Assembly (NCBI RefSeq): GCF_000150275.1
Contig: NW_002060955.1
Coordinates: forward strand, 21,240 to 85,239
Source of the DNA: Trichoplax adhaerens
Taxonomy: Eukaryota > Animalia > Placozoa
Direction: 5' to 3'
DNA: 64,000 nucleotides
Under the pieces are notes generated by a model. The model saw only the letters and a program-made list of their open reading frames with translations, ran no database searches and had not been told where the DNA came from. The first letter of the stretch is position 1; every line of letters begins with the position of its first letter. Below are positions 7,677-16,536 of this stretch, piece by piece. Both the position numbers and the translations under genes were made by a program.

Positions 7677-8658
7677 GGTGCTCAGTAGTTCTTTCTAAAG
7701 TCTTCTTGGTATTGTAGTTTTAAAAATTCTGCTAGAGTACGTCGATGTGAGTGCTTGTGATCGCTTCTACTCTATGCTGTTGTAAATTATTATCATCAAG
7801 CAAAGTAATCAGTTCTTTCTAAAAGTCTTCCTAGTATTGTAGTTTTAAAATTCTGCTACAGCATGTCGATGATCGTGCTTGTGATTGCTTCTACAGTAGT
7901 CTATTCAGTTATAAATTATTATCATCAAGCAAGGTACTCAGTAGTTCTTTCTTAAAGTCCTCCTGATAGTTTTAAAAATTCGGCTCGAGTATGTCGATTA
8001 TCGTGCTGGTGAATGCTTCCATCTTATGCTTTTGTAAATTATTATCCTAAAGCAAGGTACTCAGTAGTTTAAAAATTCTGCTACAGTATGTCGATGATCG
8101 TGCTAGTGATGGCTTCTACTCTATTTTGTTGTAAATTATTATCATCAAGCAAGGTACTCAGTAGTTCTTTCTAAAAGTCTTCCTGGTCCTGTAATTTTAA
8201 AAATTCTGTTACAGTATGCGGATGATCGTGCTTGTGATGGCTTCTATTCTATTCTGTTGTAAATTATTATCATCAAGCAAGGTACTCAGTGGTTCTTTCT
8301 AACAGTCTTCCAGGTACTGTAGTTTTAAAAATTTTGCTAGAGTATGCGGATGATCGTACTTGTGATCCGTTTTCTCTATGCTGTTGTAAATCATTATCAT
8401 CAAGAAAGGTACTCAGTAGTTCTTTCTAAAAGTCTTCCTGGTACTGTAGTTTTTAAAATTGTGCTAAAGTATGTCGATGATCGTGCTTGTGATCGCTTCT
8501 ACATGATGCTGTTGTAAATCATTATCATCAAGCAAGGTACTCAGTAGTTCTTTCTGAATGTCTTCCAGGTACTGTCGTTTAAAAAATTCTGCTAGAGTAT
8601 GCAGATGATCTTATTTGAGAACGGTTCTATTCCATTCTGTAGTAAATGATTATCATCA
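7677..8658. repeat. Tandem minisatellite, about 128-bp unit, 8 diverged copies
   Basis: Unit GGTACTCAGTAGTTCTTTCT...ATTATCATCAAGCAA starts at about 7677, 7804, 7933, 8056 (internally deleted, 97 bp), 8153, 8281, 8408 and 8536. Confidence 0.95.
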
Positions 8659-9142
8659 TGCAAATCCTATCGTAATGATGGTCTTGATCAACAGCATAGA
8701 GTAGCAGACTCTCTCTCCAATCGAAGAATCTACGTGTAGAAAGTCAGTAGCATGATATCTATCCTGTTTCAAAATCAAGCAACTATCCTCATTCTGTAGA
8801 CCAGCCACCGAAAGGGTCGCAAACATGGCAATGTTTGGCCCCGCTTGTTCTACTTCGTCCTTGTAGCCAGATATTTCCAAGCTTGCAATATTATGCAAAT
8901 GCATGGTGTATTACTAATTAATTGATGATCTTTGATCGAACTTGATGATTTCTTCATTATACTAACACTATTGCTGAAGACAACATGATTACCATATTGT
9001 CCAAGATGGCCATCCCTAAACAATAGAACAGTAGGAGATCCTGACTAGGACTACTCCATTCGCCATATTAGGTAATTACTGGGCGAATAATTCATCACTC
9101 TACTATACAGTGTGCAATACTACAGTAGACTTAAGTTGGGAG

Positions 9143-9150
9143 TATAAAAA
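9143..9150 (+). promoter_or_regulatory. Putative TATA box of the CARD gene
   Basis: TATAAAAA followed by GGG. A candidate 5'-UTR intron at 9232-9343 (G|GTACTA...TTTATAG|) ends 18 nt before the ATG at 9362. Confidence 0.4.
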
Positions 9151-9361
9151 GGGAAGAAAAATTATTAATAGTAGCATCATGACTGAGGTCTGCAAATTTT
9201 CTGCATAGTTTATGTTGATAAAATTCGGAAGGTACTATCGCTGTTTGTAGTCGTTGTTTTCGATGAACAGCACTTTAGGATGTATTTTGGTGCTGTAGCA
9301 TAATGTTTAATAACATTATGCTTCTTAATTGCTTCATTTATAGACGACAAAAAAGAGAAAG

Positions 9362-9868
9362 ATGGATTCACGTCAGAGAAATACAATTATCAAGCATTTC
9401 ACCTTAATATGCCACAACATTCCGACACAGAGATCGCTAGAAAACTTTAGTCAGTTAATCAATGATGATAATCGGCGTTACTTGGATCTATTGCCCAATG
9501 ATTACCAAAAGAAAGAAACATTGTTAAACATAATCTTGCAAACGGAACGAAATAATATTTTTCAAGAATTACTTGATTTTCTATGGCAATTTAATGCTAC
9601 TGAAGGCAATTTAGGAGAGATCGTTGCAAGAACGTACAAAAATGAATTAATTCAAGTAGTTAATTGGCAGAAAAGCAGCGAGGTAAACCTTAGAAGGCAT
9701 ACTAAGACTGTGTATCGCAGCGTTAGGGAAATGCAAGATATCCTTACATCGATCCATGATCAAGGTATTTCATATTCAAAAATAGATCTTCCAGTATCAC
9801 CTACACTACCTACAATACAGCCAATAAATAAGATCTTTTTCATTCAGCAATTCAACTTCATTAAGTGA
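9362..9868 (+). CDS. CARD (death-fold) domain protein, Apaf-1-CARD-like N-terminus; standalone ORF or first coding exon
   Basis: 168-aa ORF. Residues 1 to about 92 (MDSRQRNTIIKHFTLICHNIPTQ...PNDYQKKETLLNIILQTERNN...LLDFL...NLGEIV) align by eye with the Apaf-1 CARD pattern recalled from memory (MDAKARNCLLQH...DIKT...PTQQQRAAMLIKMILKKDND). Internal donor-like sites follow 9682, 9764 and 9864. Confidence 0.7.
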   Translation: MDSRQRNTIIKHFTLICHNIPTQRSLENFSQLINDDNRRYLDLLPNDYQKKETLLNIILQTERNNIFQELLDFLWQFNATEGNLGEIVARTYKNELIQVVNWQKSSEVNLRRHTKTVYRSVREMQDILTSIHDQGISYSKIDLPVSPTLPTIQPINKIFFIQQFNFIK

Positions 9869-9874
9869 ATGTAC

Positions 9875-10316
9875 TCCTCTATCTTATGAAGAGTAGCTAC
9901 TGTTATCCAACTTAAAATTATACACTTAGCCATGATGTAGCCTATGGGAAGTAGTCCATTCTACTGCGTTAGTGTTGCATAATAATCCTCTATCTTATGA
10001 AGAGTAGCTACTGTTATCCAACTTAAAATTATACACTTAGCCATGATGTAGCCTACGTGAAGTAGTCCATTCTACTGCGTTAGTGTTGCATAATAATCCT
10101 CTATCTTATGAAGAGTAGCTACTGTTATCCAACTTAAAATTATACACTTAGCCATGATGTAGCCTACGGGAAGTAGTCCATTCTACTGCGTTAGTGTTGC
10201 ATAATAATCCTCTATCTTATGAAGAGTAGCTACTGTTATCCAACTTAAAACTTTACACTTAGCCATGATGTAGCCTATGGGAAGTAGTCAATTCTACTGC
10301 GTTAGTGTTACATAAT
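9875..10316. repeat. Tandem repeat, 111-bp unit x4, near-identical
   Basis: TCCTCTATCTTATGAAGAG... starts at 9875, 9986, 10097 and 10208, with only a few substitutions. It begins 7 nt after the CARD ORF stop. Confidence 0.97.
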
Positions 10317-10624
10317 ACAGCACTATGTTAACATGATACAGCGACATTGATCATCATTCTATGTGATCTGATAAAACATTTTTTTCTTCATGTAATCACT
10401 TGAAATGACCCATGCTCTCTATAGAAATAGCCAAGGTAATAACAGTAATTCAATTCAACCTCTTTCGTTATCATCACTGCAAGCAAAGTTTGACATAAAT
10501 TGTTATTATAAATAGCTGTAGATTAACCTTCATTGATAGGAAATTTCTTTCATTACTTGTGTACATCGAGTAAACCTATGAAATCTTTGCCATGTTTACT
10601 AAATATATACGTCATGTACTGTAG

Positions 10625-13600
10625 ATGCACGAACAAGTTGGCGATAAAATTACTTTCGTCCTGTCGGTAAGGAATGTCTCTTATTCGAGATTCGTCATTT
10701 CTCCTCGCAGTTTATACGTACTATGTCGCAGATTAAGTAGTAAATCATTTCAATTAGCCGCAATTGATTCAAATTTCTATTCAGTCGAGTAATAATGTCT
10801 GATTGCAACTAATATAGAACCTGACTTCAAAATCGACACCTCAAGAAATATACGACGCTGCTCGAATTGCAAGGTGTTTAGGCTATTTCGTAATTCTACA
10901 GCTAGTAATTAATAAACTATTCGTGGCTAGGAATTATAGCAATTAATCTATTTACAACGACAGGGCCATCATGGCAATAACTTCTATACCAGACCCAGTT
11001 ATGAGGTGCATTATCATTTTGACTGACTGTGTATGTCATGCCAACTTATTAACACTGTCATTTCCTGACTTGAAATAGATCTCAATTGGTAATTAAACTA
11101 GTTCGCTGTCTTATTCGGTCTGATAGGTATGATTTAATATTTATCGTTATGTTATAGCGAATAGATTCAATATAATTATTGTAACATCAGTGTTATTAAT
11201 TATTGTTGAACTATAAATATAAAAATAGCTCGAATCCAGAAGTTCAAGTAGAACTTTGCAGAGCTTTAAATTCATTATTAGAAAAGGACTATCGTACCTT
11301 TAAAGATGAAGGTTTTTGCAAAATTGAAATTTTTCTTAATATCTTTTACTAAAGATTTAAAAAGCATATAAATTTTGTGCTATAATACTGTCAGGTGGAG
11401 TCACAGAAAGTATTGAATTATTGTCTTCGCCCTATCCTGAGGTAGCATACCATGCTTGTGATTTGTTTACTAAGATCGCACCGTTCGTTTTCCTCGAAGA
11501 TGTCACCTTTGCCAATACTCTCTATTCTACTCTCCAAGCCTATCGACATGATGTAATTTGTAATATGTTTAAGCGGTCTAGCATTATGCGTCCATGTTAA
11601 CATGCAATCTATAATGCATACTCCGACTAACCATTGATTTTTATTACAATGCAGATGAATTTCATTAAACTGATCAGTAAAATTTTAGCTATCATGATTC
11701 ACGGTATAGGAAGTCCAATACAGCCCCAATATCTTGTTCCTGTAAATCCAATCATTAAAATTTAGAGAATAAATTCATATAGTAGTTCTTCAATTGCAAC
11801 ATTAATTCAATAACTCATATTTTATAGCTTTATCCGGTATTTAACGATTTGATTTGGTACAATGATAGAGAGGTGAGGAATTTATAAACTCTTACTACCT
11901 TGGTAACGTACTTGCCTGTCGCTGAATAATAATAATAATAGACTCTTTGATGTAGGTTATCGTAAACGTTTGCAAATCTTTCGTCGATATATTCGATGAC
12001 TCGGAGACGGACACTAACGATTTTTTATCGGTATATTTCTCTGGATAAAATTTTACAAATTTAACTTTTATTTAAATTTCCGTAATAAATAGTATAATTT
12101 AATGACAGAAAGCCGATACTTCTGATTTAACTCAAAATGTCAATTTTAATTTTTGTTTAGCATATTTTAAACTATGGTTGGTTGCCTTATATAGTCCCTC
12201 TTGTTGCTTCATCTTCAAAAGAGTTATCGGTTAACTAGGATTACATTGTCGATAGTTAATGTAAAATTGAATTTTACAATAAATTATAATAAAGTTGCTT
12301 GTTTTAATGTAAAGGAAACTTCTCTAACTGCTCTCATGAACCTCACTTATACGCCCAGATGGCGTAGAACTACCACCGAAGCTACTAGTAGATGCATAAA
12401 GGTATACGCCTACCCATAGAACACCTGCACTGAGCCTTACTGCCATTATGTAGCTTTAATAACTAAAGATACTTCGAAGATAGACACACTGAGACTGATT
12501 AATACTTTACGTTTGTAGACTGTTGTAGATTTGAAAGTGCTTGAATATCTTAAGCCACATTTTTGTGGTAACTGCGGAGTAACCTACCTTTGGGTAAGTA
12601 TCGAACTTCAATTTAGTTATTCGTTGTTACAAAACAATAAGCAAAAGAGAACTTTATTTGATTGCTGTGCATTTGGATTTAATCGTAGCAAAATATTTCT
12701 TATTAGGTATCATTATCATTACTGATTAATATATCTCTGAGTGACTTTCGACAAGTAAGATAAACATTTACATCATGATGAATTGGTTCATATGTTTAAA
12801 CTTCATAAATGCTAATCTTCTTGCACTTGGAACTTATTTAGAGTATATTTGATGCAAAATTACTGAAAAGAGTTTTGCAAATCTTAGTACAGGTAAGATT
12901 TTAGTTCGTTAACAATCAACCCACGCGCCATAGCAATTTTTTGAGTTTCGTATCAATATAAATTATCACGTTAGCCAAAGGATCTCGATATTGAAAGAAG
13001 ATCTTTTACAATCATCAGCGGCATTATTGATGGCGGTGATGTCAGTCAGGTATATTTACAAACAATGTAATTTTTTTCATCACTTCATGCTGAGATCTTT
13101 AATATTTTAAGTCAACTCAATCATTTGGTACAATAATAAATAATATCAACAATTTATTAGAATGTATACCTAGCCAAAATTGGAGTGGTAACAGCATTAT
13201 GTAATTATATGCGAAAGCAATTACAACTACACGTGGTAAAGTATTAAATTGCAAAATACAATTTACAAAGATAAAACTTTAAAATATTATGGTGGTAAAT
13301 CATTTATTTGAACAGACAGCAGATCGATGCTCCTCAGCGATTGTAAAGCATTTCGAGGTATTCTGCAACAGATGAAAAGCTTTTCAATTATACTGAATCT
13401 AAAAATACAATTATATAGCAATCAATTCTTCTAGAGTGTTAGTTGAAACATGACTTGATGTATTTTATTTTTAAAATCGTTGTTAGCATTTCAAATTTTT
13501 ATGATTACATGTCTTCTCTACGGGTATACTGTCCTCGCTGATTGAATTGTAACTGCTATAGCTAAAAATTTTTAGAATAATACTCTTTTTAAATTATGCA

Positions 13601-13941
13601 ATGTCAATATTGGGTCATAATCTGCTTGATATTTTAGTATTCTCTTCAACTAATGCTTATTAGGTCATTAAAGATACACCTATATATTCTACATTGCGAC
13701 AAGAAATGAAAGAGGATGGTTGTAAGTGTCAATCTTGAATAGCATCTAATCTTCGTTATCGTCTTAATTTATACCCTGCTCGTCAATAATATAACAGCAG
13801 AAACTAGTAATTTGATGTTCTGTTCTTTATCATAACTCATTAAAAGCTTTAGAAAAAATTCGATACATAATAAAGATGAGTTCGAAAGCAAGTATTCGAG
13901 CGCGTTTACAGGGACTCCACGCTGAATTAGCTTCAAATTAA
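10625..13941 (+). CDS. Divergent importin-alpha (karyopherin-alpha)-like armadillo-repeat protein, 20 exons, 463 aa; 5' end uncertain
   Basis: Exons 10625-10666, 10818-10873, 10964-11005, 11079-11126, 11229-11311, 11395-11552, 11655-11741, 11828-11872, 11956-12030, 12161-12229, 12315-12401, 12519-12593, 12707-12754, 12842-12892, 12975-13049, 13161-13235, 13316-13357, 13443-13523, 13664-13721 and 13847-13941. All introns are GT-AG (73-151 nt) and the 1392 nt join into one open frame. The peptides are collinear with importin-alpha ARMs as recalled: LTSKSTPQEIYDAARIAR, NPEVQVELCRALNSL, GGVTESIELLSSPYPEVAYHAC, LYPVFNDLIWYNDREVIVNVC, ETSLTALMNLT, SIFDAKLLKRVLQIL, IISGIIDGGDVSQNVYLAKIGVVTALC, EDGSLEKI. 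Confidence 0.85.
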
Positions 13942-14220
13942 ACGTATACATCTGGTACGATATGTAGGCACTTTACTACGTTAAATCCTAATGCAAAGAT
14001 TTGAAAACCGAAGCCGATTAATCCTATGTATGATTGAATTTTGAATATTTAGGCCAAGGTAAACTTGTTTAAGTGCATACGTTTATGATATCTTGTACAA
14101 AGACCAATTTGAACAAATGGCTAGGATTTCATGCCGAAATGTAACATGAATATTTAGTGTTGCAATTAACATTAGATATAATATATTAAAGCTTACAGGC
14201 TACCTGTAGAGCGGCTGTCT

Positions 14221-16536
14221 CTATAATGTATTAGAAATTATAATCGGGAATTTTAATTGTAAAGTTTTGGAAGATGGAATATTTACAAATATCTAGAAGA
14301 GATAGATTATATAAAATTAATTGATTATTTTAGTATGAAAATAAAAGCTAGTATTGACGAACATGAAGATATTTGATATAGACTATAAATTACCCAGCGA
14401 TACAAATTCTTGGTGTTGAACAATTGATATTACATTAATTATTTTACCTTCAAATAGTACTCCACTTTCAAAATATCCACCTTTGTATTGGTTGGGGACA
14501 CATCGGGTACTGTAATTACATGATCATTCCAGATCGCCCTTCCATTTGGTCGAATGGCTTCTCCAGAGGTAGATAAGCAATATACAACCTTATCTCTGTA
14601 ATAACGACCTTATAGCAAGATATACGAAGTGATTTTTGCGTAAAATGATAGGTGCACTACCCGTATATATATAATTCTAATAATTCGGTCAATCCAGTTA
14701 GAACAAACCTTCTGCTTCCCGATTGATAGTTTGCACGAATCCGGCCCAAATACCTGATAACGTTAGATTTGTGCCATTTTCCACTTGCGATGTAATAATT
14801 TTAATATCTTGACCTATTCTACATGCTGTTCGATCAATCTGTGCCCTTAGCAGCAAAGGGCCCGACTTACAACAAAAGCAACAGAGTGTTTTTTCAGTCT
14901 CCACCATTTCTGAAGGCGCCTGGACGAAAATTTATTTACGATTACAAACTGAAGAAGTTATCAAAATCACCGTAAGAATTATTAAAGAAAGGAAATATAG
15001 CTATGCTTGCAGTAATCTAAGATTGCTCTCGGATTGCCAAAATAAGTAGTAAAAATCACTTTATGCATATCTTAACAGTGATCGCATAAAGTCAAGAAGA
15101 ATCTGTAAACGTACTAAAAATAAAACGGTATCCTATCAAAAACTATGAGATCTTATAATTTCATTCTATTTAAGAATTAAGAGATAAGCTTGAAAGTAAT
15201 TACGGTATCCTATCGAAATTATGAGATCTTACAATTTCATTCTATTTAAGAATTAAGAAATATGCCCTTGCATTTATGTATGCAAATTTAATAGTACGGT
15301 TTGCAATATTTATTAGTATCATAACATGTGAAAGATGAAGCTAGTCACTGCTGCAAGTAATGATTATAAAGTGGTTTCTTTTTCATTTGAGTGTACATCA
15401 GAGTAGAAATAGAATGCCATATTTTAAAGATCGAAAAATGCAGAAACTGGTTATCTAAATCACTCCCAAATATGTACAAAGCAAACTAACTGATAATGAC
15501 AGTCACTTCCGTATAAGACCCGTGATCATAGATTAAAACCTCTGCGATTTTCTCGACTGTTGTTTAAGGCTAATATTTAAAAAATGTTTGCTTATCGTTT
15601 GTTTCAAGATATATCTTCGCGATTTAATAAGCATAATGTTTAGATGAAACTTTATAACTCTTGACATTGCATACTATTAAATTATCTATGACAAGAAATA
15701 TCTTAACTCAATTTAAGACCATCGCTAACTTACCATGAGATGACTAAGACGTGAAGGCATAGTTTCATGATAGAGGAATATTTTCTTAAATTTAACCTTC
15801 CTAGTCATAGATTCATGCGATATTAAATAAGATTTAATCATGTAACGAATGCTATTGCCATATAAACCCTCGAAGGTAGATGGTAGTTGGATTTTCGGCA
15901 ATTGAAAAGCGAAGGTAAAGTTGTATTTTCCAGGAAATAGAACTCCTGGGTTTTCCACTGTTTCAGTATCTAAACCGATGTTCAAGATAAATTAATAAAT
16001 AGTCAGTTAGGCTGGAACAGATAAAGTAAATCAGAATTTTCCACTTCAAATTAAAGAAATAGAAGAGACAAAGTTCGTATTGTGATCAGGAATGATCGAA
16101 ATATTAAAAATAGTATTTCGCTTCTAAAAATTTTTACAGAAAGGTGGTACCTCGTTCAAAGCGATAATTTATATTGAGCAATTCTCATCTACTGATTTGC
16201 AGACATTAAAATAATGAACAGGCTTAAAATTACTACTATAAATGTTAACTAAGGAAATGACCCAAGTAAAAGATTACCGGTACTTAACATACCTTCTGTA
16301 CTTGCGGTGATCATGGAATCAATAATATTACGCTTACTGTAAGCGTATCTCAAATCGTTTGTAGGTCCATACTGAATTTGAGTCTTCGCTCTGCCATGAA
16401 TTCGAACTTGAATACATTGAATTGTTAACGGATTTTTCAATTCTAAATGAATATGTCCAGATACAATATCACGAGCATGATAGATTTCTTGTAAATCATC
16501 GAGAAATATATAATAGGATAGAATTGTTTGAGGCAT
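14221..16536 (-). CDS. Alpha-arrestin gene 2 (inverted, no C-terminal tail), 5 exons, 307 aa
   Basis: Exons 16536-16293, 15969-15734, 14919-14709, 14608-14448 and 14292-14221, GT-AG with phases 1,0,1,0. Motifs GKYNFTFAFQLP, LPSTFEG..GNSIRY, LCCFCCKSGP, VSPTN, LKVEYYLK and FPIIISNTL*. Confidence 0.9.
15125..15258. repeat. Direct duplication (77-bp period, 2 copies) in intron 2 of arrestin gene 2
   Basis: ACGGTATCCTATC...TGAGATCTTA.AATTTCATTCTATTTAAGAATTAAGA at 15125 and 15202. Confidence 0.85.

What the first reader, a model, noticed from the sequence alone, without database searches (positions are those of the whole stretch)
10625..13941. Hidden 20-exon importin-alpha-like gene that has lost the IBB domain and the NLS-binding tryptophans
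Seen: 20 small exons (42-158 nt) splice into one 463-aa frame, of which the ORF track shows only fragments. Known: importin-alpha binds classical NLSs through W-x-x-x-N arrays in ARM2-4 and ARM7-8, and binds importin-beta through a basic IBB domain. Seen: the equivalent helices here read CRALNS, CDLFTK, SKILAI, CKSFVD, LTALMN, LSLLIN and FTIISG, so no Trp remains and Asn survives in only two. No basic IBB-like exon is visible upstream. Inference: an importin-alpha scaffold with an intact frame, repurposed away from classical nuclear import.
Basis: partly seen in the sequence, partly recalled or inferred. Interest (0 to 1): 0.85.

Follow-up and report, generated by a model that had tools for sequence, protein, structure and literature searches.

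The report
CARD fused to importin-alpha-derived armadillo domain
This is a real, expressed and conserved gene of the placozoan Trichoplax. A caspase-recruitment domain (CARD) has taken the place of the importin-beta-binding domain on a very diverged importin-alpha body that has lost its nuclear-signal-binding residues. It therefore looks like a nuclear-import adaptor rebuilt as a cell-death or immune adaptor.

Summary
I find 19 GT-AG exons (10625-13941, 436 aa), not 20 exons and 463 aa. Spliced transcript contigs from three studies support every junction.

Those contigs also join an upstream exon (ATG at 9362) and an 11-nt micro-exon (10425-10435) in frame. The true CDS therefore has 21 exons and 574 aa.

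The upstream exon encodes a divergent CARD, not an IBB. Evidence: profile-profile probability 94.9% to Pfam-positive CARDs of the same genome, and best fold matches to NOD1, Apaf-1 and Dark CARDs.

Residues 139-574 descend from importin-alpha:
- They align end to end with ARM1-10 of solved importin-alphas (E about 7e-9).
- The Atlas model matches importin-alpha clusters at TM 0.81-0.83.
- 11 of 17 introns coincide exactly with introns of canonical Trichoplax importin-alpha genes. The other six share the phase within 3-12 nt.

The major-site and ARM8 Trp/Asn pairs are all replaced. ARM7 keeps a Trp and an Asn, but at the wrong spacing.

A divergent placozoan contig carries the same layout under purifying selection.

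The gene is not hidden: it is TRIADDRAFT_59941, and the H2 orthologue is named "Importin subunit alpha-1a, partial". Both public models are mis-spliced. This scan had already flagged the CARD fusion on this stretch and an IBB-less importin-alpha family elsewhere in the genome. Function is inferred, not shown.

The parts
9202..9361 (+). 5' UTR of exon 1. Transcript contigs begin at 9202 or 9240, and there is an in-frame stop at 9341.
   Evidence: table 8 (X4 record 8, X6 record 14) and an adapter loose end at 9196; for the upstream in-frame stop.
9362..9764 (+). Coding part of exon 1, aa 1-135: a divergent CARD (about aa 1-95) plus a linker helix. The donor is at 9764|GT, phase 1.
   Evidence: Joint 9764 onward in X4, X6 and X11. 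hhalign 94.9%, E 4e-8, to Pfam-positive CARDs of the same genome. AF2 model pLDDT 77. Foldseek top hits are RIG-I and Apaf-1 CARDs. VIA top hits are NOD1, Dark and Apaf-1 CARDs, Z 8.4-8.8.
9868..10316 (.). Tandem repeat of about 110 bp inside intron 1. It is not coding for this gene.
   Evidence: Read directly. It lies between donor 9764 and the micro-exon.
10425..10435 (+). 11-nt micro-exon (aa 135-138) that restores phase 0 between the CARD exon and the ARM body.
   Evidence: Nine extra letters between joint sides 9764 and 10623 in X4, X6 and X11 (table 5c). They match 10425-10433, flanked by AG and GT.
10625..10666 (+). Exon 3 (aa 139-152), the helix before ARM1.
   Evidence: joint 10666/10818.
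10818..10873 (+). Exon 4 (aa 153-171), ARM1.
   Evidence: The intron after it (170, phase 2) coincides exactly with canonical paralogues.
10964..11005 (+). Exon 5 (aa 171-185), the ARM1/2 link.
   Evidence: intron 184.2 is exact. This exon is missing from the public model P0001.
11079..11126 (+). Exon 6 (aa 185-201), ARM2 helices 1-2.
11229..11311 (+). Exon 7 (aa 201-229), ARM2 helix 3. The canonical Trp is R212 and the canonical Asn is S216.
   Evidence: intron 228.1 is exact.
11395..11552 (+). Exon 8 (aa 229-281), ARM3 (Trp replaced by D251, Asn by K255) and the start of ARM4.
   Evidence: intron 281.0 is exact.
11655..11741 (+). Exon 9 (aa 282-310), ARM4 helix 3. Trp is replaced by K290 and Asn by I294.
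   Evidence: (X6 record 14); intron 310.0 is exact.
11828..11872 (+). Exon 10 (aa 311-325), ARM5 helices 1-2.
   Evidence: intron 325.0 is exact.
11956..12030 (+). Exon 11 (aa 326-350), ARM5 helix 3. Trp is replaced by K332.
   Evidence: intron 350.0 is shared exactly with paralogue L025.
12161..12229 (+). Exon 12 (aa 351-373), ARM6 helices 1-2.
   Evidence: intron 373.0 is exact.
12315..12401 (+). Exon 13 (aa 374-402), ARM6 helix 3. N382 is kept, and a 7-aa insertion follows.
12519..12593 (+). Exon 14 (aa 403-427), ARM7. It ends on W427.
12707..12754 (+). Exon 15 (aa 428-443), ARM7 helix 3. N435 is kept, 8 residues after W427.
   Evidence: intron 443.0 is exact in all three canonical paralogues.
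12842..12892 (+). Exon 16 (aa 444-460), ARM8 helices 1-2.
12975..13049 (+). Exon 17 (aa 461-485), ARM8 helix 3. Trp is replaced by T472 and Asn by G476. The importin-alpha-typical GG motif is kept.
   Evidence: intron 485.0 is exact.
13161..13235 (+). Exon 18 (aa 486-510), ARM9.
13316..13357 (+). Exon 19 (aa 511-524), ARM9 helix 3.
   Evidence: The joint 13357/13664 skips 306 nt, so there is no extra exon.
13664..13721 (+). Exon 20 (aa 525-544), start of ARM10.
   Evidence: The phase-1 intron 543.1 matches canonical genes exactly.
13847..13941 (+). Exon 21 (aa 544-574), ARM10 with an LEKI motif in place of the canonical (I/L)(E/D)KI, then the stop at 13939-13941.
13954..14051 (+). Intron inside the 3' UTR. 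The UTR runs on to at least 14297.
   Evidence: Joint 13953/14052, GT..AG, in X4 and X6.

Best explanation
Shown. One single-copy Trichoplax gene (window 9202 to about 14300, + strand, 21 coding exons, 574 aa) encodes three parts:
- an N-terminal divergent CARD (about aa 1-95);
- a helical linker;
- a ten-repeat armadillo solenoid (aa 139-574).
The solenoid descends from an intron-rich importin-alpha gene by DNA-level duplication. The IBB-coding exons have been replaced by a CARD exon plus an 11-nt micro-exon. The Trp/Asn pairs that hold classical NLS peptides in ARM2-4 and ARM8 are all substituted. The gene is transcribed, and its two-part layout is kept under purifying selection in a distant placozoan.

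Inferred. The protein no longer works as an importin-beta-dependent NLS adaptor. The CARD most likely docks it by homotypic CARD-CARD contact onto the expanded placozoan CARD machinery (Apaf-1-like ATPases, CARD-caspases). The remodelled concave groove of the importin-alpha-type solenoid would then bind some extended, non-NLS peptide ligand. On this reading the protein is an adaptor or sensor of death-fold signalling that has no nucleotide-binding module.
For: - Gene model and expression. Spliced contigs from X4, X6 and X11 (three studies) show every junction directly or by length.
- Single copy.
- CARD: the best own-genome matches of exon 1 are Pfam-positive CARDs. hhalign gives 94.9%, E 4e-8. 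The AF2 model shows the split first helix and a six-helix bundle. Foldseek top hits are RIG-I and Apaf-1 CARDs, rmsd 2.4 A over 78 residues. An independent VIA search ranks NOD1, Dark, Apaf-1, ARC, RIG-I, MDA5 and cIAP1 CARDs first.
- Importin-alpha descent: phmmer gives one collinear stretch, aa about 130-539 of P0003, against ARM1-10 at E 7e-9 to 3e-6. The Atlas model matches only importin-alpha clusters, TM 0.81-0.83. 11 of 17 introns are identical in position and phase to canonical paralogues, and the other 6 share the phase within 3-12 nt.
- Loss of IBB and of the W/N pairs. Canonical IBB-bearing genes exist elsewhere in the genome.
- Selection: on contig L007 the orthologous CARD exon has dN 0.43 and dS 1.22. 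ARM exons 3-10 are 55% identical, with pN 0.25 against a saturated pS of 0.75, and the splice sites are kept.
- Context: placozoans have many CARD/NB-ARC genes and CARD-caspases (PMC6321704).
Against: - No binding, localisation or phenotype data exist, so the functional half is inference.
- Pfam's CARD model does not hit exon 1. The fold-search scores are middling for a helical bundle (Foldseek E about 0.2, VIA Z below 9).
- Pfam Arm and Arm_3 stay below threshold on the body.
- ARM7 may retain a Trp and an Asn, and ARM6 an Asn, so some peptide binding of the minor-site type cannot be excluded.
- IBB-less importin-alphas are reported to function in transport in yeast and Drosophila (PMC8645118).
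- My own AF2 run of the whole protein failed (pLDDT 49). The structural match of the body therefore rests on the Atlas model.
Confidence: 0.6

Rival explanations
1. It is still a transport factor. On this view it is an IBB-less importin-alpha that carries a special cargo into or out of the nucleus without importin-beta. It would use the C-terminal repeats or the ARM7 remnant, and the CARD would select CARD-bearing cargo or regulate it.
For: - IBB-less importin-alphas arose repeatedly in Drosophila and are said to be transport-competent (PMC8645118).
- ARM6 and ARM7 keep an Asn, and ARM7 may keep its Trp.
- The ARM10 motif and its intron are kept.
Against: - The whole major site and ARM8 are substituted.
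- Identity to canonical paralogues is only about 21%, whereas those are 45-49% identical to one another.
- The Arm_3 profile gives no hit.
Confidence: 0.17
2. It is a pathogen-effector trap (an integrated-decoy type). The importin-alpha look-alike would bait microbial or viral proteins that target importin-alpha, and the CARD would then trigger caspase activation.
For: - The architecture is a sensor-like repeat domain plus a CARD, without a NOD module.
- Placozoans rely on expanded Apaf-1/CARD systems (PMC6321704).
- Sequence change versus the orthologue is fast, at only 45-55% identity.
Against: - A decoy should keep the NLS groove that effectors bind, and here it is dismantled.
- dN/dS is well below 1, not the signature of an arms race.
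- There is no expression-on-infection data.
Confidence: 0.1
3. It is a CARD-pathway inhibitor or scaffold. The ARM part would serve only for stability or localisation, with no ligand-binding role, as in CARD-only regulators such as ARC.
For: - ARC's CARD is among the best fold matches.
- The groove residues are not conserved with importin-alpha.
Against: 436 residues of solenoid are kept under purifying selection, with helix-3 faces 55% identical between distant placozoans.
Confidence: 0.08
4. There are two separate genes (a CARD-only gene and an ARM-only gene starting at ATG 10625), and read-through contigs merely make them look fused. Or the locus is a decaying pseudogene.
For: - An ATG stands at 10625.
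- ORF 9362-9868 can be read as a stand-alone 168-aa protein, as another first-stage note did.
Against: - Contigs of three studies splice 9764 to the micro-exon to 10625 in frame. None is seen starting at 10625.
- 10625 follows a perfect acceptor.
- The same exon order is kept on L007.
- The frame is intact and dN is below dS.
Confidence: 0.04

Closest known systems
Canonical importin-alpha (KPNA; here the Trichoplax genes at G000:C1410:5915933-5920295, C1411:936002-938304 and C1410:1250066-1254942)
   Same: - Ten collinear ARM repeats.
- The GG motif after ARM8 and the (I/L)(E/D)KI motif of ARM10.
- 11 introns identical in position and phase, and 6 more within 3-12 nt.
   Different: - No IBB; a CARD stands in its place.
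- The W/N pairs of ARM2, 3, 4 and 8 are replaced.
- About 21% identity.
- Pfam Arm and Arm_3 are below threshold.
IBB-less importin-alpha paralogues of Drosophila (alphaKap2A-H, alphaKap4, 5 and 6; PMC8645118)
   Same: They are importin-alpha duplicates that lost the IBB domain and are thought to have left classical importin-beta-dependent import.
   Different: - The fly genes are mostly retrogenes or partly processed copies. This gene keeps essentially all ancestral introns, so it is a DNA-level duplicate.
- The paper reports no new N-terminal domain for the fly genes, whereas this one gained a CARD.
Trichoplax family of importin-alpha-derived genes without IBB and NLS groove (earlier finding s1-742979; compare my loci L026 and L027)
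   Same: Same genome, same descent with the exon layout kept, and the same losses (my own check on this gene; L026 and L027).
   Different: - This gene has no close paralogue by exon-level search.
- It carries a transcript-proven CARD.
- Whether other members carry death-fold domains is open. A Death-domain exon lies just upstream of L027, but I have no RNA proof.
CARD adaptors and CARD-plus-repeat proteins without a NOD module (for example CRADD/RAIDD-like adaptors, ARC, and the Trichoplax CARD-RCC1 gene of earlier finding s1-769138)
   Same: An N-terminal CARD joined to a protein-binding module, with no NB-ARC or NACHT ATPase.
   Different: The partner module is an importin-alpha-type solenoid. 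I found no paper describing that pairing.

Membership tests
Importin-alpha (KPNA) | N-terminal IBB domain (PF01749) | tested here: not met
   There is no IBB hit on exon 1, P0001 or P0003, even at E 10. The genome's IBB exons lie elsewhere.
Importin-alpha (KPNA) | Ten tandem ARM repeats collinear with solved importin-alpha | tested here: met
   A single phmmer stretch of P0003 (aa about 130-539) aligns to chain residues about 20-420, E 7e-9 to 3e-6, and the natural hits shown are all importin-alpha. Atlas model TM is 0.81-0.83.
Importin-alpha (KPNA) | Pfam Arm repeats and the Arm_3 C-terminal repeat above threshold | tested here: not met
   Arm scores 18.4 bits against a cut-off of 20.6, and Arm_3 gives no hit. 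There is no Arm or Arm_3 hit at this locus in the genome scans.
Importin-alpha (KPNA) | W-x-x-x-N ladders of the major (ARM2-4) and minor (ARM7-8) NLS sites | tested here: not met
   The pairs read R212/S216, D251/K255, K290/I294 and T472/G476. ARM7 has W427 and N435 eight residues apart.
Importin-alpha (KPNA) | Descent from an importin-alpha gene (shared exon-intron structure) | tested here: met
   11 of 17 introns match in position and phase, and 6 more share the phase within 3-12 nt beside indels. The comparison is with models I built for L023, L024 and L025.
Importin-alpha (KPNA) | Binds importin-beta and classical NLS cargo | not testable with these tools
   This needs pull-down or ITC with NLS peptides and importin-beta.
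CARD (death-fold superfamily) | Match to Pfam CARD (PF00619) | tested here: not met
   There is no CARD hit on exon 1 at E 10.
CARD (death-fold superfamily) | Profile-level homology to recognised CARDs | tested here: met
   hhalign of exon 1 plus its orthologue against three Pfam-positive CARD exons of the same genome gives probability 94.9%, E 4.2e-8, over 106 columns.
CARD (death-fold superfamily) | Six-helix bundle with a split helix 1, whose nearest solved folds are CARDs | tested here: met
   AF2 pLDDT is 77, with helices 3-11 and 13-19 split. Foldseek gives Apaf-1 CARD at rmsd 2.4 A over 78 residues, probability 0.99. VIA gives Z 8.0-8.8 for the NOD1, Dark, Apaf-1, ARC, RIG-I, MDA5 and cIAP1 CARDs. 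Scores are moderate.
CARD (death-fold superfamily) | Homotypic CARD-CARD binding | not tested
   I claim no partner, so no complex job was sent.
Drosophila-type IBB-less importin-alpha retrogenes | Intron-poor retrocopy origin | tested here: not met
   The gene keeps 20 introns, which match those of the parental-type genes.

The most novel reading that the evidence does not exclude
Placozoans may have turned importin-alpha into a new class of death-fold adaptors. The IBB would have been swapped for a CARD here, and perhaps for a Death domain at a second diverged importin-alpha gene (L027). The peptide-binding solenoid of a transport adaptor would then feed ligands, or sense them, for CARD/DD signalling platforms without any NOD ATPase.
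Probability: 0.25. Interest if true: 0.8.

Novelty: new variant of a known kind. Interest (0 to 1): 0.6.

Why it matters
Importin-alpha is among the most conserved eukaryotic adaptors, and its known derivatives mostly just lose the IBB. Here the IBB is replaced by a CARD and the NLS groove is rebuilt, yet the gene stays under selection in at least two placozoan lineages. That gives a clean, datable example of exon shuffling creating a new signalling architecture. It also adds a candidate non-NOD sensor or adaptor to the unusually large placozoan cell-death toolkit. Finally, it corrects two public gene models, both of which hide the true architecture: one drops four exons, and both miss part of the linker and the micro-exon.

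Tried and rejected
- **Exon-by-exon searches.** Pfam and PDB searches of ten exon translations gave nothing useful. The exons are too short and too diverged.
I looked for it in the 306-nt intron 13358-13663. No in-phase GT-AG exon fits, and transcripts skip the whole interval.
- **Three homologous-protein searches.** The queries were P0001, P0003 residues 114-549, and the two-row alignment A5. They returned only the two public models of this gene, plus two plant U-box proteins at E 0.009-0.4. As a result I obtained no outside importin-alpha sequences by id, built no KPNA tree, and did not recover the annotated protein of L027.
- **Alignment A4.** This was P0003 plus 31 exon pieces. MAFFT stacked the ARM repeats on one another, so I discarded it.
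- **AF2 of P0003 without an alignment.** pLDDT was 49, so I did not use it for fold search.
- **dN/dS between T. adhaerens and Trichoplax sp. H2.** There were only 3 exonic differences (1 synonymous, 2 non-synonymous), which is uninformative.
- I redid the step with coordinates only.
- **The joined 574-aa model.** It was never sent to a search, fold or database tool. It was built only inside scripts, for frame checks and local alignments. The public protein P0003 stood in for it. P0003 is identical over aa 139-574, has two substitutions in the CARD, and lacks aa 108-138.
Full report
**What is in the sequence.**
The window is AT-rich (about 31% G+C) with short GT-AG introns. From 10625 to 13941 on the + strand I could chain 19 exons of 42-158 nt into one open frame of 1311 nt, or 436 aa. 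The only gap large enough for another exon is the 306-nt intron 13358-13663, and no in-phase exon fits there.

**Transcript evidence.**
I found public runs holding this stretch and laid four of them on 8600-14400.
- Runs X4, X6 and X11 come from three different studies, and X11 is on record as RNA. All three carry spliced contigs.
- Fifteen joints are listed. All are GT..AG at my exon borders, including 13357/13664.
- The remaining borders follow from contig length arithmetic in table 8 of that call.
- X7 holds unspliced, genome-like pieces.
- The same contigs show that 10625 is not the start. They run unbroken from 9202/9240 to 9764, then carry nine extra letters, then continue at 10623. The extra letters match an 11-nt micro-exon at 10425-10435 with AG and GT flanks.
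- 403 nt (9362-9764) plus 11 nt equals 414 nt, so the upstream ORF is in frame with the ATG at 10625.
- An in-frame stop at 9341 makes 9362 the first usable ATG.
- The CDS is therefore 21 exons, 1725 nt and 574 aa. A further intron lies in the 3' UTR (13954-14051).

**The gene is already annotated, but wrongly.**
A search of 1.8 billion representatives with the exon-1 translation found only two proteins.
- P0001 is TRIADDRAFT_59941 of Trichoplax adhaerens. This 460-aa model skips four exons and has a wrong 3' end.
- P0003 is the Trichoplax sp. H2 protein named "Importin subunit alpha-1a, partial" (549 aa). It equals my model over aa 139-574. It uses a donor at 9682, so it lacks aa 108-138 and the micro-exon.
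- These names also identify the genome, which earlier notes of this scan had called Trichoplax.
P0003 served as its by-reference stand-in, and the joined translation existed only inside scripts.

**The body is an importin-alpha derivative.**
Exon pieces alone hit nothing. Pfam on P0003 gives only sub-threshold ARM_ARMC5, Arm and HEAT hits, with no IBB and no Arm_3. Three other lines of evidence establish the descent.
- phmmer of P0003 against all PDB chains gives one collinear stretch from about aa 130 to 539 onto residues about 20-420 of IBB-deleted importin-alphas (E 7e-9 to 3e-6). All natural hits among the best 60 shown are importin-alpha; the rest of those 60 are designed ARM proteins. 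The alignment includes the GG motif after ARM8 and the ARM10 motif.
- The ESM Atlas holds P0003 letter for letter (model pTM 0.68). All ten of its nearest structural clusters are importin-alpha, at TM 0.81-0.83 over residues 114-549. By language-model features it looks like a generic ARM protein.
- Gene structure is the strongest evidence. The genome has three canonical importin-alpha genes and at least two diverged ones. I built exon models for the three canonical genes from coordinates and splice sites. I then mapped introns onto a MAFFT alignment.
- Of the 17 introns of this gene between aa 170 and 543, 11 coincide exactly in position and phase with an intron of at least one canonical paralogue.
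- The other six have a same-phase counterpart 3-12 nt away, each next to an alignment gap. No intron in that span lacks such a counterpart.
- By my estimate, chance would give well under one exact match.
- Protein identity to the canonical genes is only about 21%, whereas they are 45-49% identical to one another.
- The gene has no close paralogue by exon-level search.

**What was lost.**
In the alignments the canonical Trp/Asn pairs read as follows.

| Repeat | Canonical Trp position | Canonical Asn position |
|---|---|---|
| ARM2 | R212 | S216 |
| ARM3 | D251 | K255 |
| ARM4 | K290 | I294 |
| ARM8 | T472 | G476 |

- ARM5's Trp is K332. ARM6 keeps N382.
- ARM7 has W427 and N435, but eight residues apart rather than four. 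phmmer places that Trp one position off, and MAFFT places it on the canonical Trp with a four-residue insertion.
The statement that no Trp remains holds for the W-x-x-x-N geometry, with this one caveat.

**What was gained.**
Pfam does not recognise exon 1. Several other tests point to a CARD.
- Its best matches in the same genome, though weak, are three exons that Pfam calls CARD.
- A profile of exon 1 plus its orthologue matches a profile of those CARDs at 94.9% probability, E 4e-8.
- An AF2 model from that small alignment (pLDDT 77) shows a helical bundle with a split first helix, followed by a separate linker helix.
- Foldseek's best hits are the RIG-I tandem CARDs and the Apaf-1 CARD (rmsd 2.4 A over 78 residues, probability 0.99, but E only about 0.2).
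- A Foldseek-independent scan of 48,000 chains ranks the NOD1, Dark, Apaf-1, ARC, RIG-I, MDA5 and cIAP1 CARDs first (Z 8.0-8.8).
- I take the CARD assignment as about 85-90% secure.
There is an upstream exon, but it is a CARD.

**Conservation.**
- T. adhaerens and H2 differ at only 3 of 1725 coding positions, so they are too close for dN/dS.
- P0002 is 45% identical to exon 1. It lies on a 2981-nt Logan contig of run SRR30660616 (L007). That contig also carries, in the same order and strand, recognisable counterparts of exons 3-10 and the start of exon 11, with AG/GT flanks at the same places on the seven exons checked (3, 4 and 6-10). The sequence is not in the T. adhaerens genome, so it comes from a more distant placozoan.
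- For the CARD exon, dN is 0.43 and dS is 1.22.
- For 170 ARM codons, identity is 55% and pN is 0.25, against a saturated pS of 0.75.
- Both halves and their linkage are therefore under purifying selection.
- The orthologue still has the ARM2 Trp and the ARM4 Asn, so the groove was dismantled stepwise.

**How it probably works.**
Shown: the architecture, its expression, its descent and the losses.
Inferred: without an IBB it cannot be handed to importin-beta in the usual way, and without the major-site ladder it should not hold classical NLS peptides.
- A CARD is a homotypic docking module, and placozoans have a dozen or so Apaf-1-like genes and CARD-caspases (PMC6321704).
- I therefore read the protein as a death-fold adaptor or sensor. 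Its importin-alpha-type solenoid would bind a different extended ligand.
- I hold the whole statement at about 0.6. The structural half alone is about 0.9.
- Rivals are listed with their tests: special importin-beta-independent transport, as proposed for the IBB-less importin-alphas of Drosophila (PMC8645118); an effector trap; a passive CARD regulator; and two separate genes.

**Novelty.**
- IBB-less importin-alpha paralogues are known.
- This scan had already noted an IBB-less, groove-less importin-alpha family elsewhere in this genome. It had also flagged a possible CARD fusion on this very stretch.
- I found no paper that names this gene, or that describes a CARD joined to an importin-alpha body.
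- I class it as a new variant of a known kind.

**Not done.**
- A tree with KPNA paralogues: no outside importin-alpha sequences could be fetched by id.
- A confident AF2 model of the body.
- Any binding test.

Noticed in passing
L027 = G000:C1410:1278500-1285000 (+); Death exon at L027:177-467, ARM exons at about L027:1507-4989: This is a second diverged importin-alpha-like gene, 27 kb downstream of a canonical importin-alpha. I saw no IBB exon in the fetched stretch between the Death exon and ARM1. A bona fide Death-domain exon (Pfam Death, E 3e-13) lies 0.85 kb upstream on the same strand. The frame stays open from its phase-1 donor (467) through L027:1323-1390 into the ARM1 exon 1507-1607. 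If these are spliced together, a death-fold domain has replaced the IBB twice.
   Followed up: partly
L026 = G000:C1410:971500-978500 (+): This is a third diverged importin-alpha-like gene. One exon hits Arm at E 7e-16, Arm_3 is only weak, and several helix-3 Trp/Asn positions are changed. I recognised no N-terminal domain.
   Followed up: partly
window 9868-10316: About four copies of a 110-bp tandem repeat sit inside intron 1 of the gene, between the CARD exon and the micro-exon. Another first-stage note read the CARD ORF as a stand-alone gene flanked by arrays.
   Followed up: partly
window 9682 versus 9764, and 10425-10435: The public H2 model splices 9682 to 10625. Contigs of three runs splice 9764 to the 11-nt micro-exon to 10625. 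Either the H2 model is wrong or there are two isoforms that differ by 31 residues of linker.
   Followed up: partly
window 13954-14051: A GT-AG intron lies in the 3' UTR, starting 13 nt after the stop codon. It is seen in two runs.
   Followed up: no
L003 and L004 = G000:C1398:76028-76411 and 83659-84042: Two nearly identical tandem CARD exons (Pfam CARD, about 27 bits) are the closest own-genome relatives of this gene's CARD. I did not look at their genes.
   Followed up: no
L028:8764-11080 (-), the H2 orthologous locus; corresponds to the window just downstream of 14300: The next gene, on the opposite strand, is an arrestin (Arrestin_N and Arrestin_C). This fits the 'arrestin cluster' that other notes mention for this window.
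   Followed up: no
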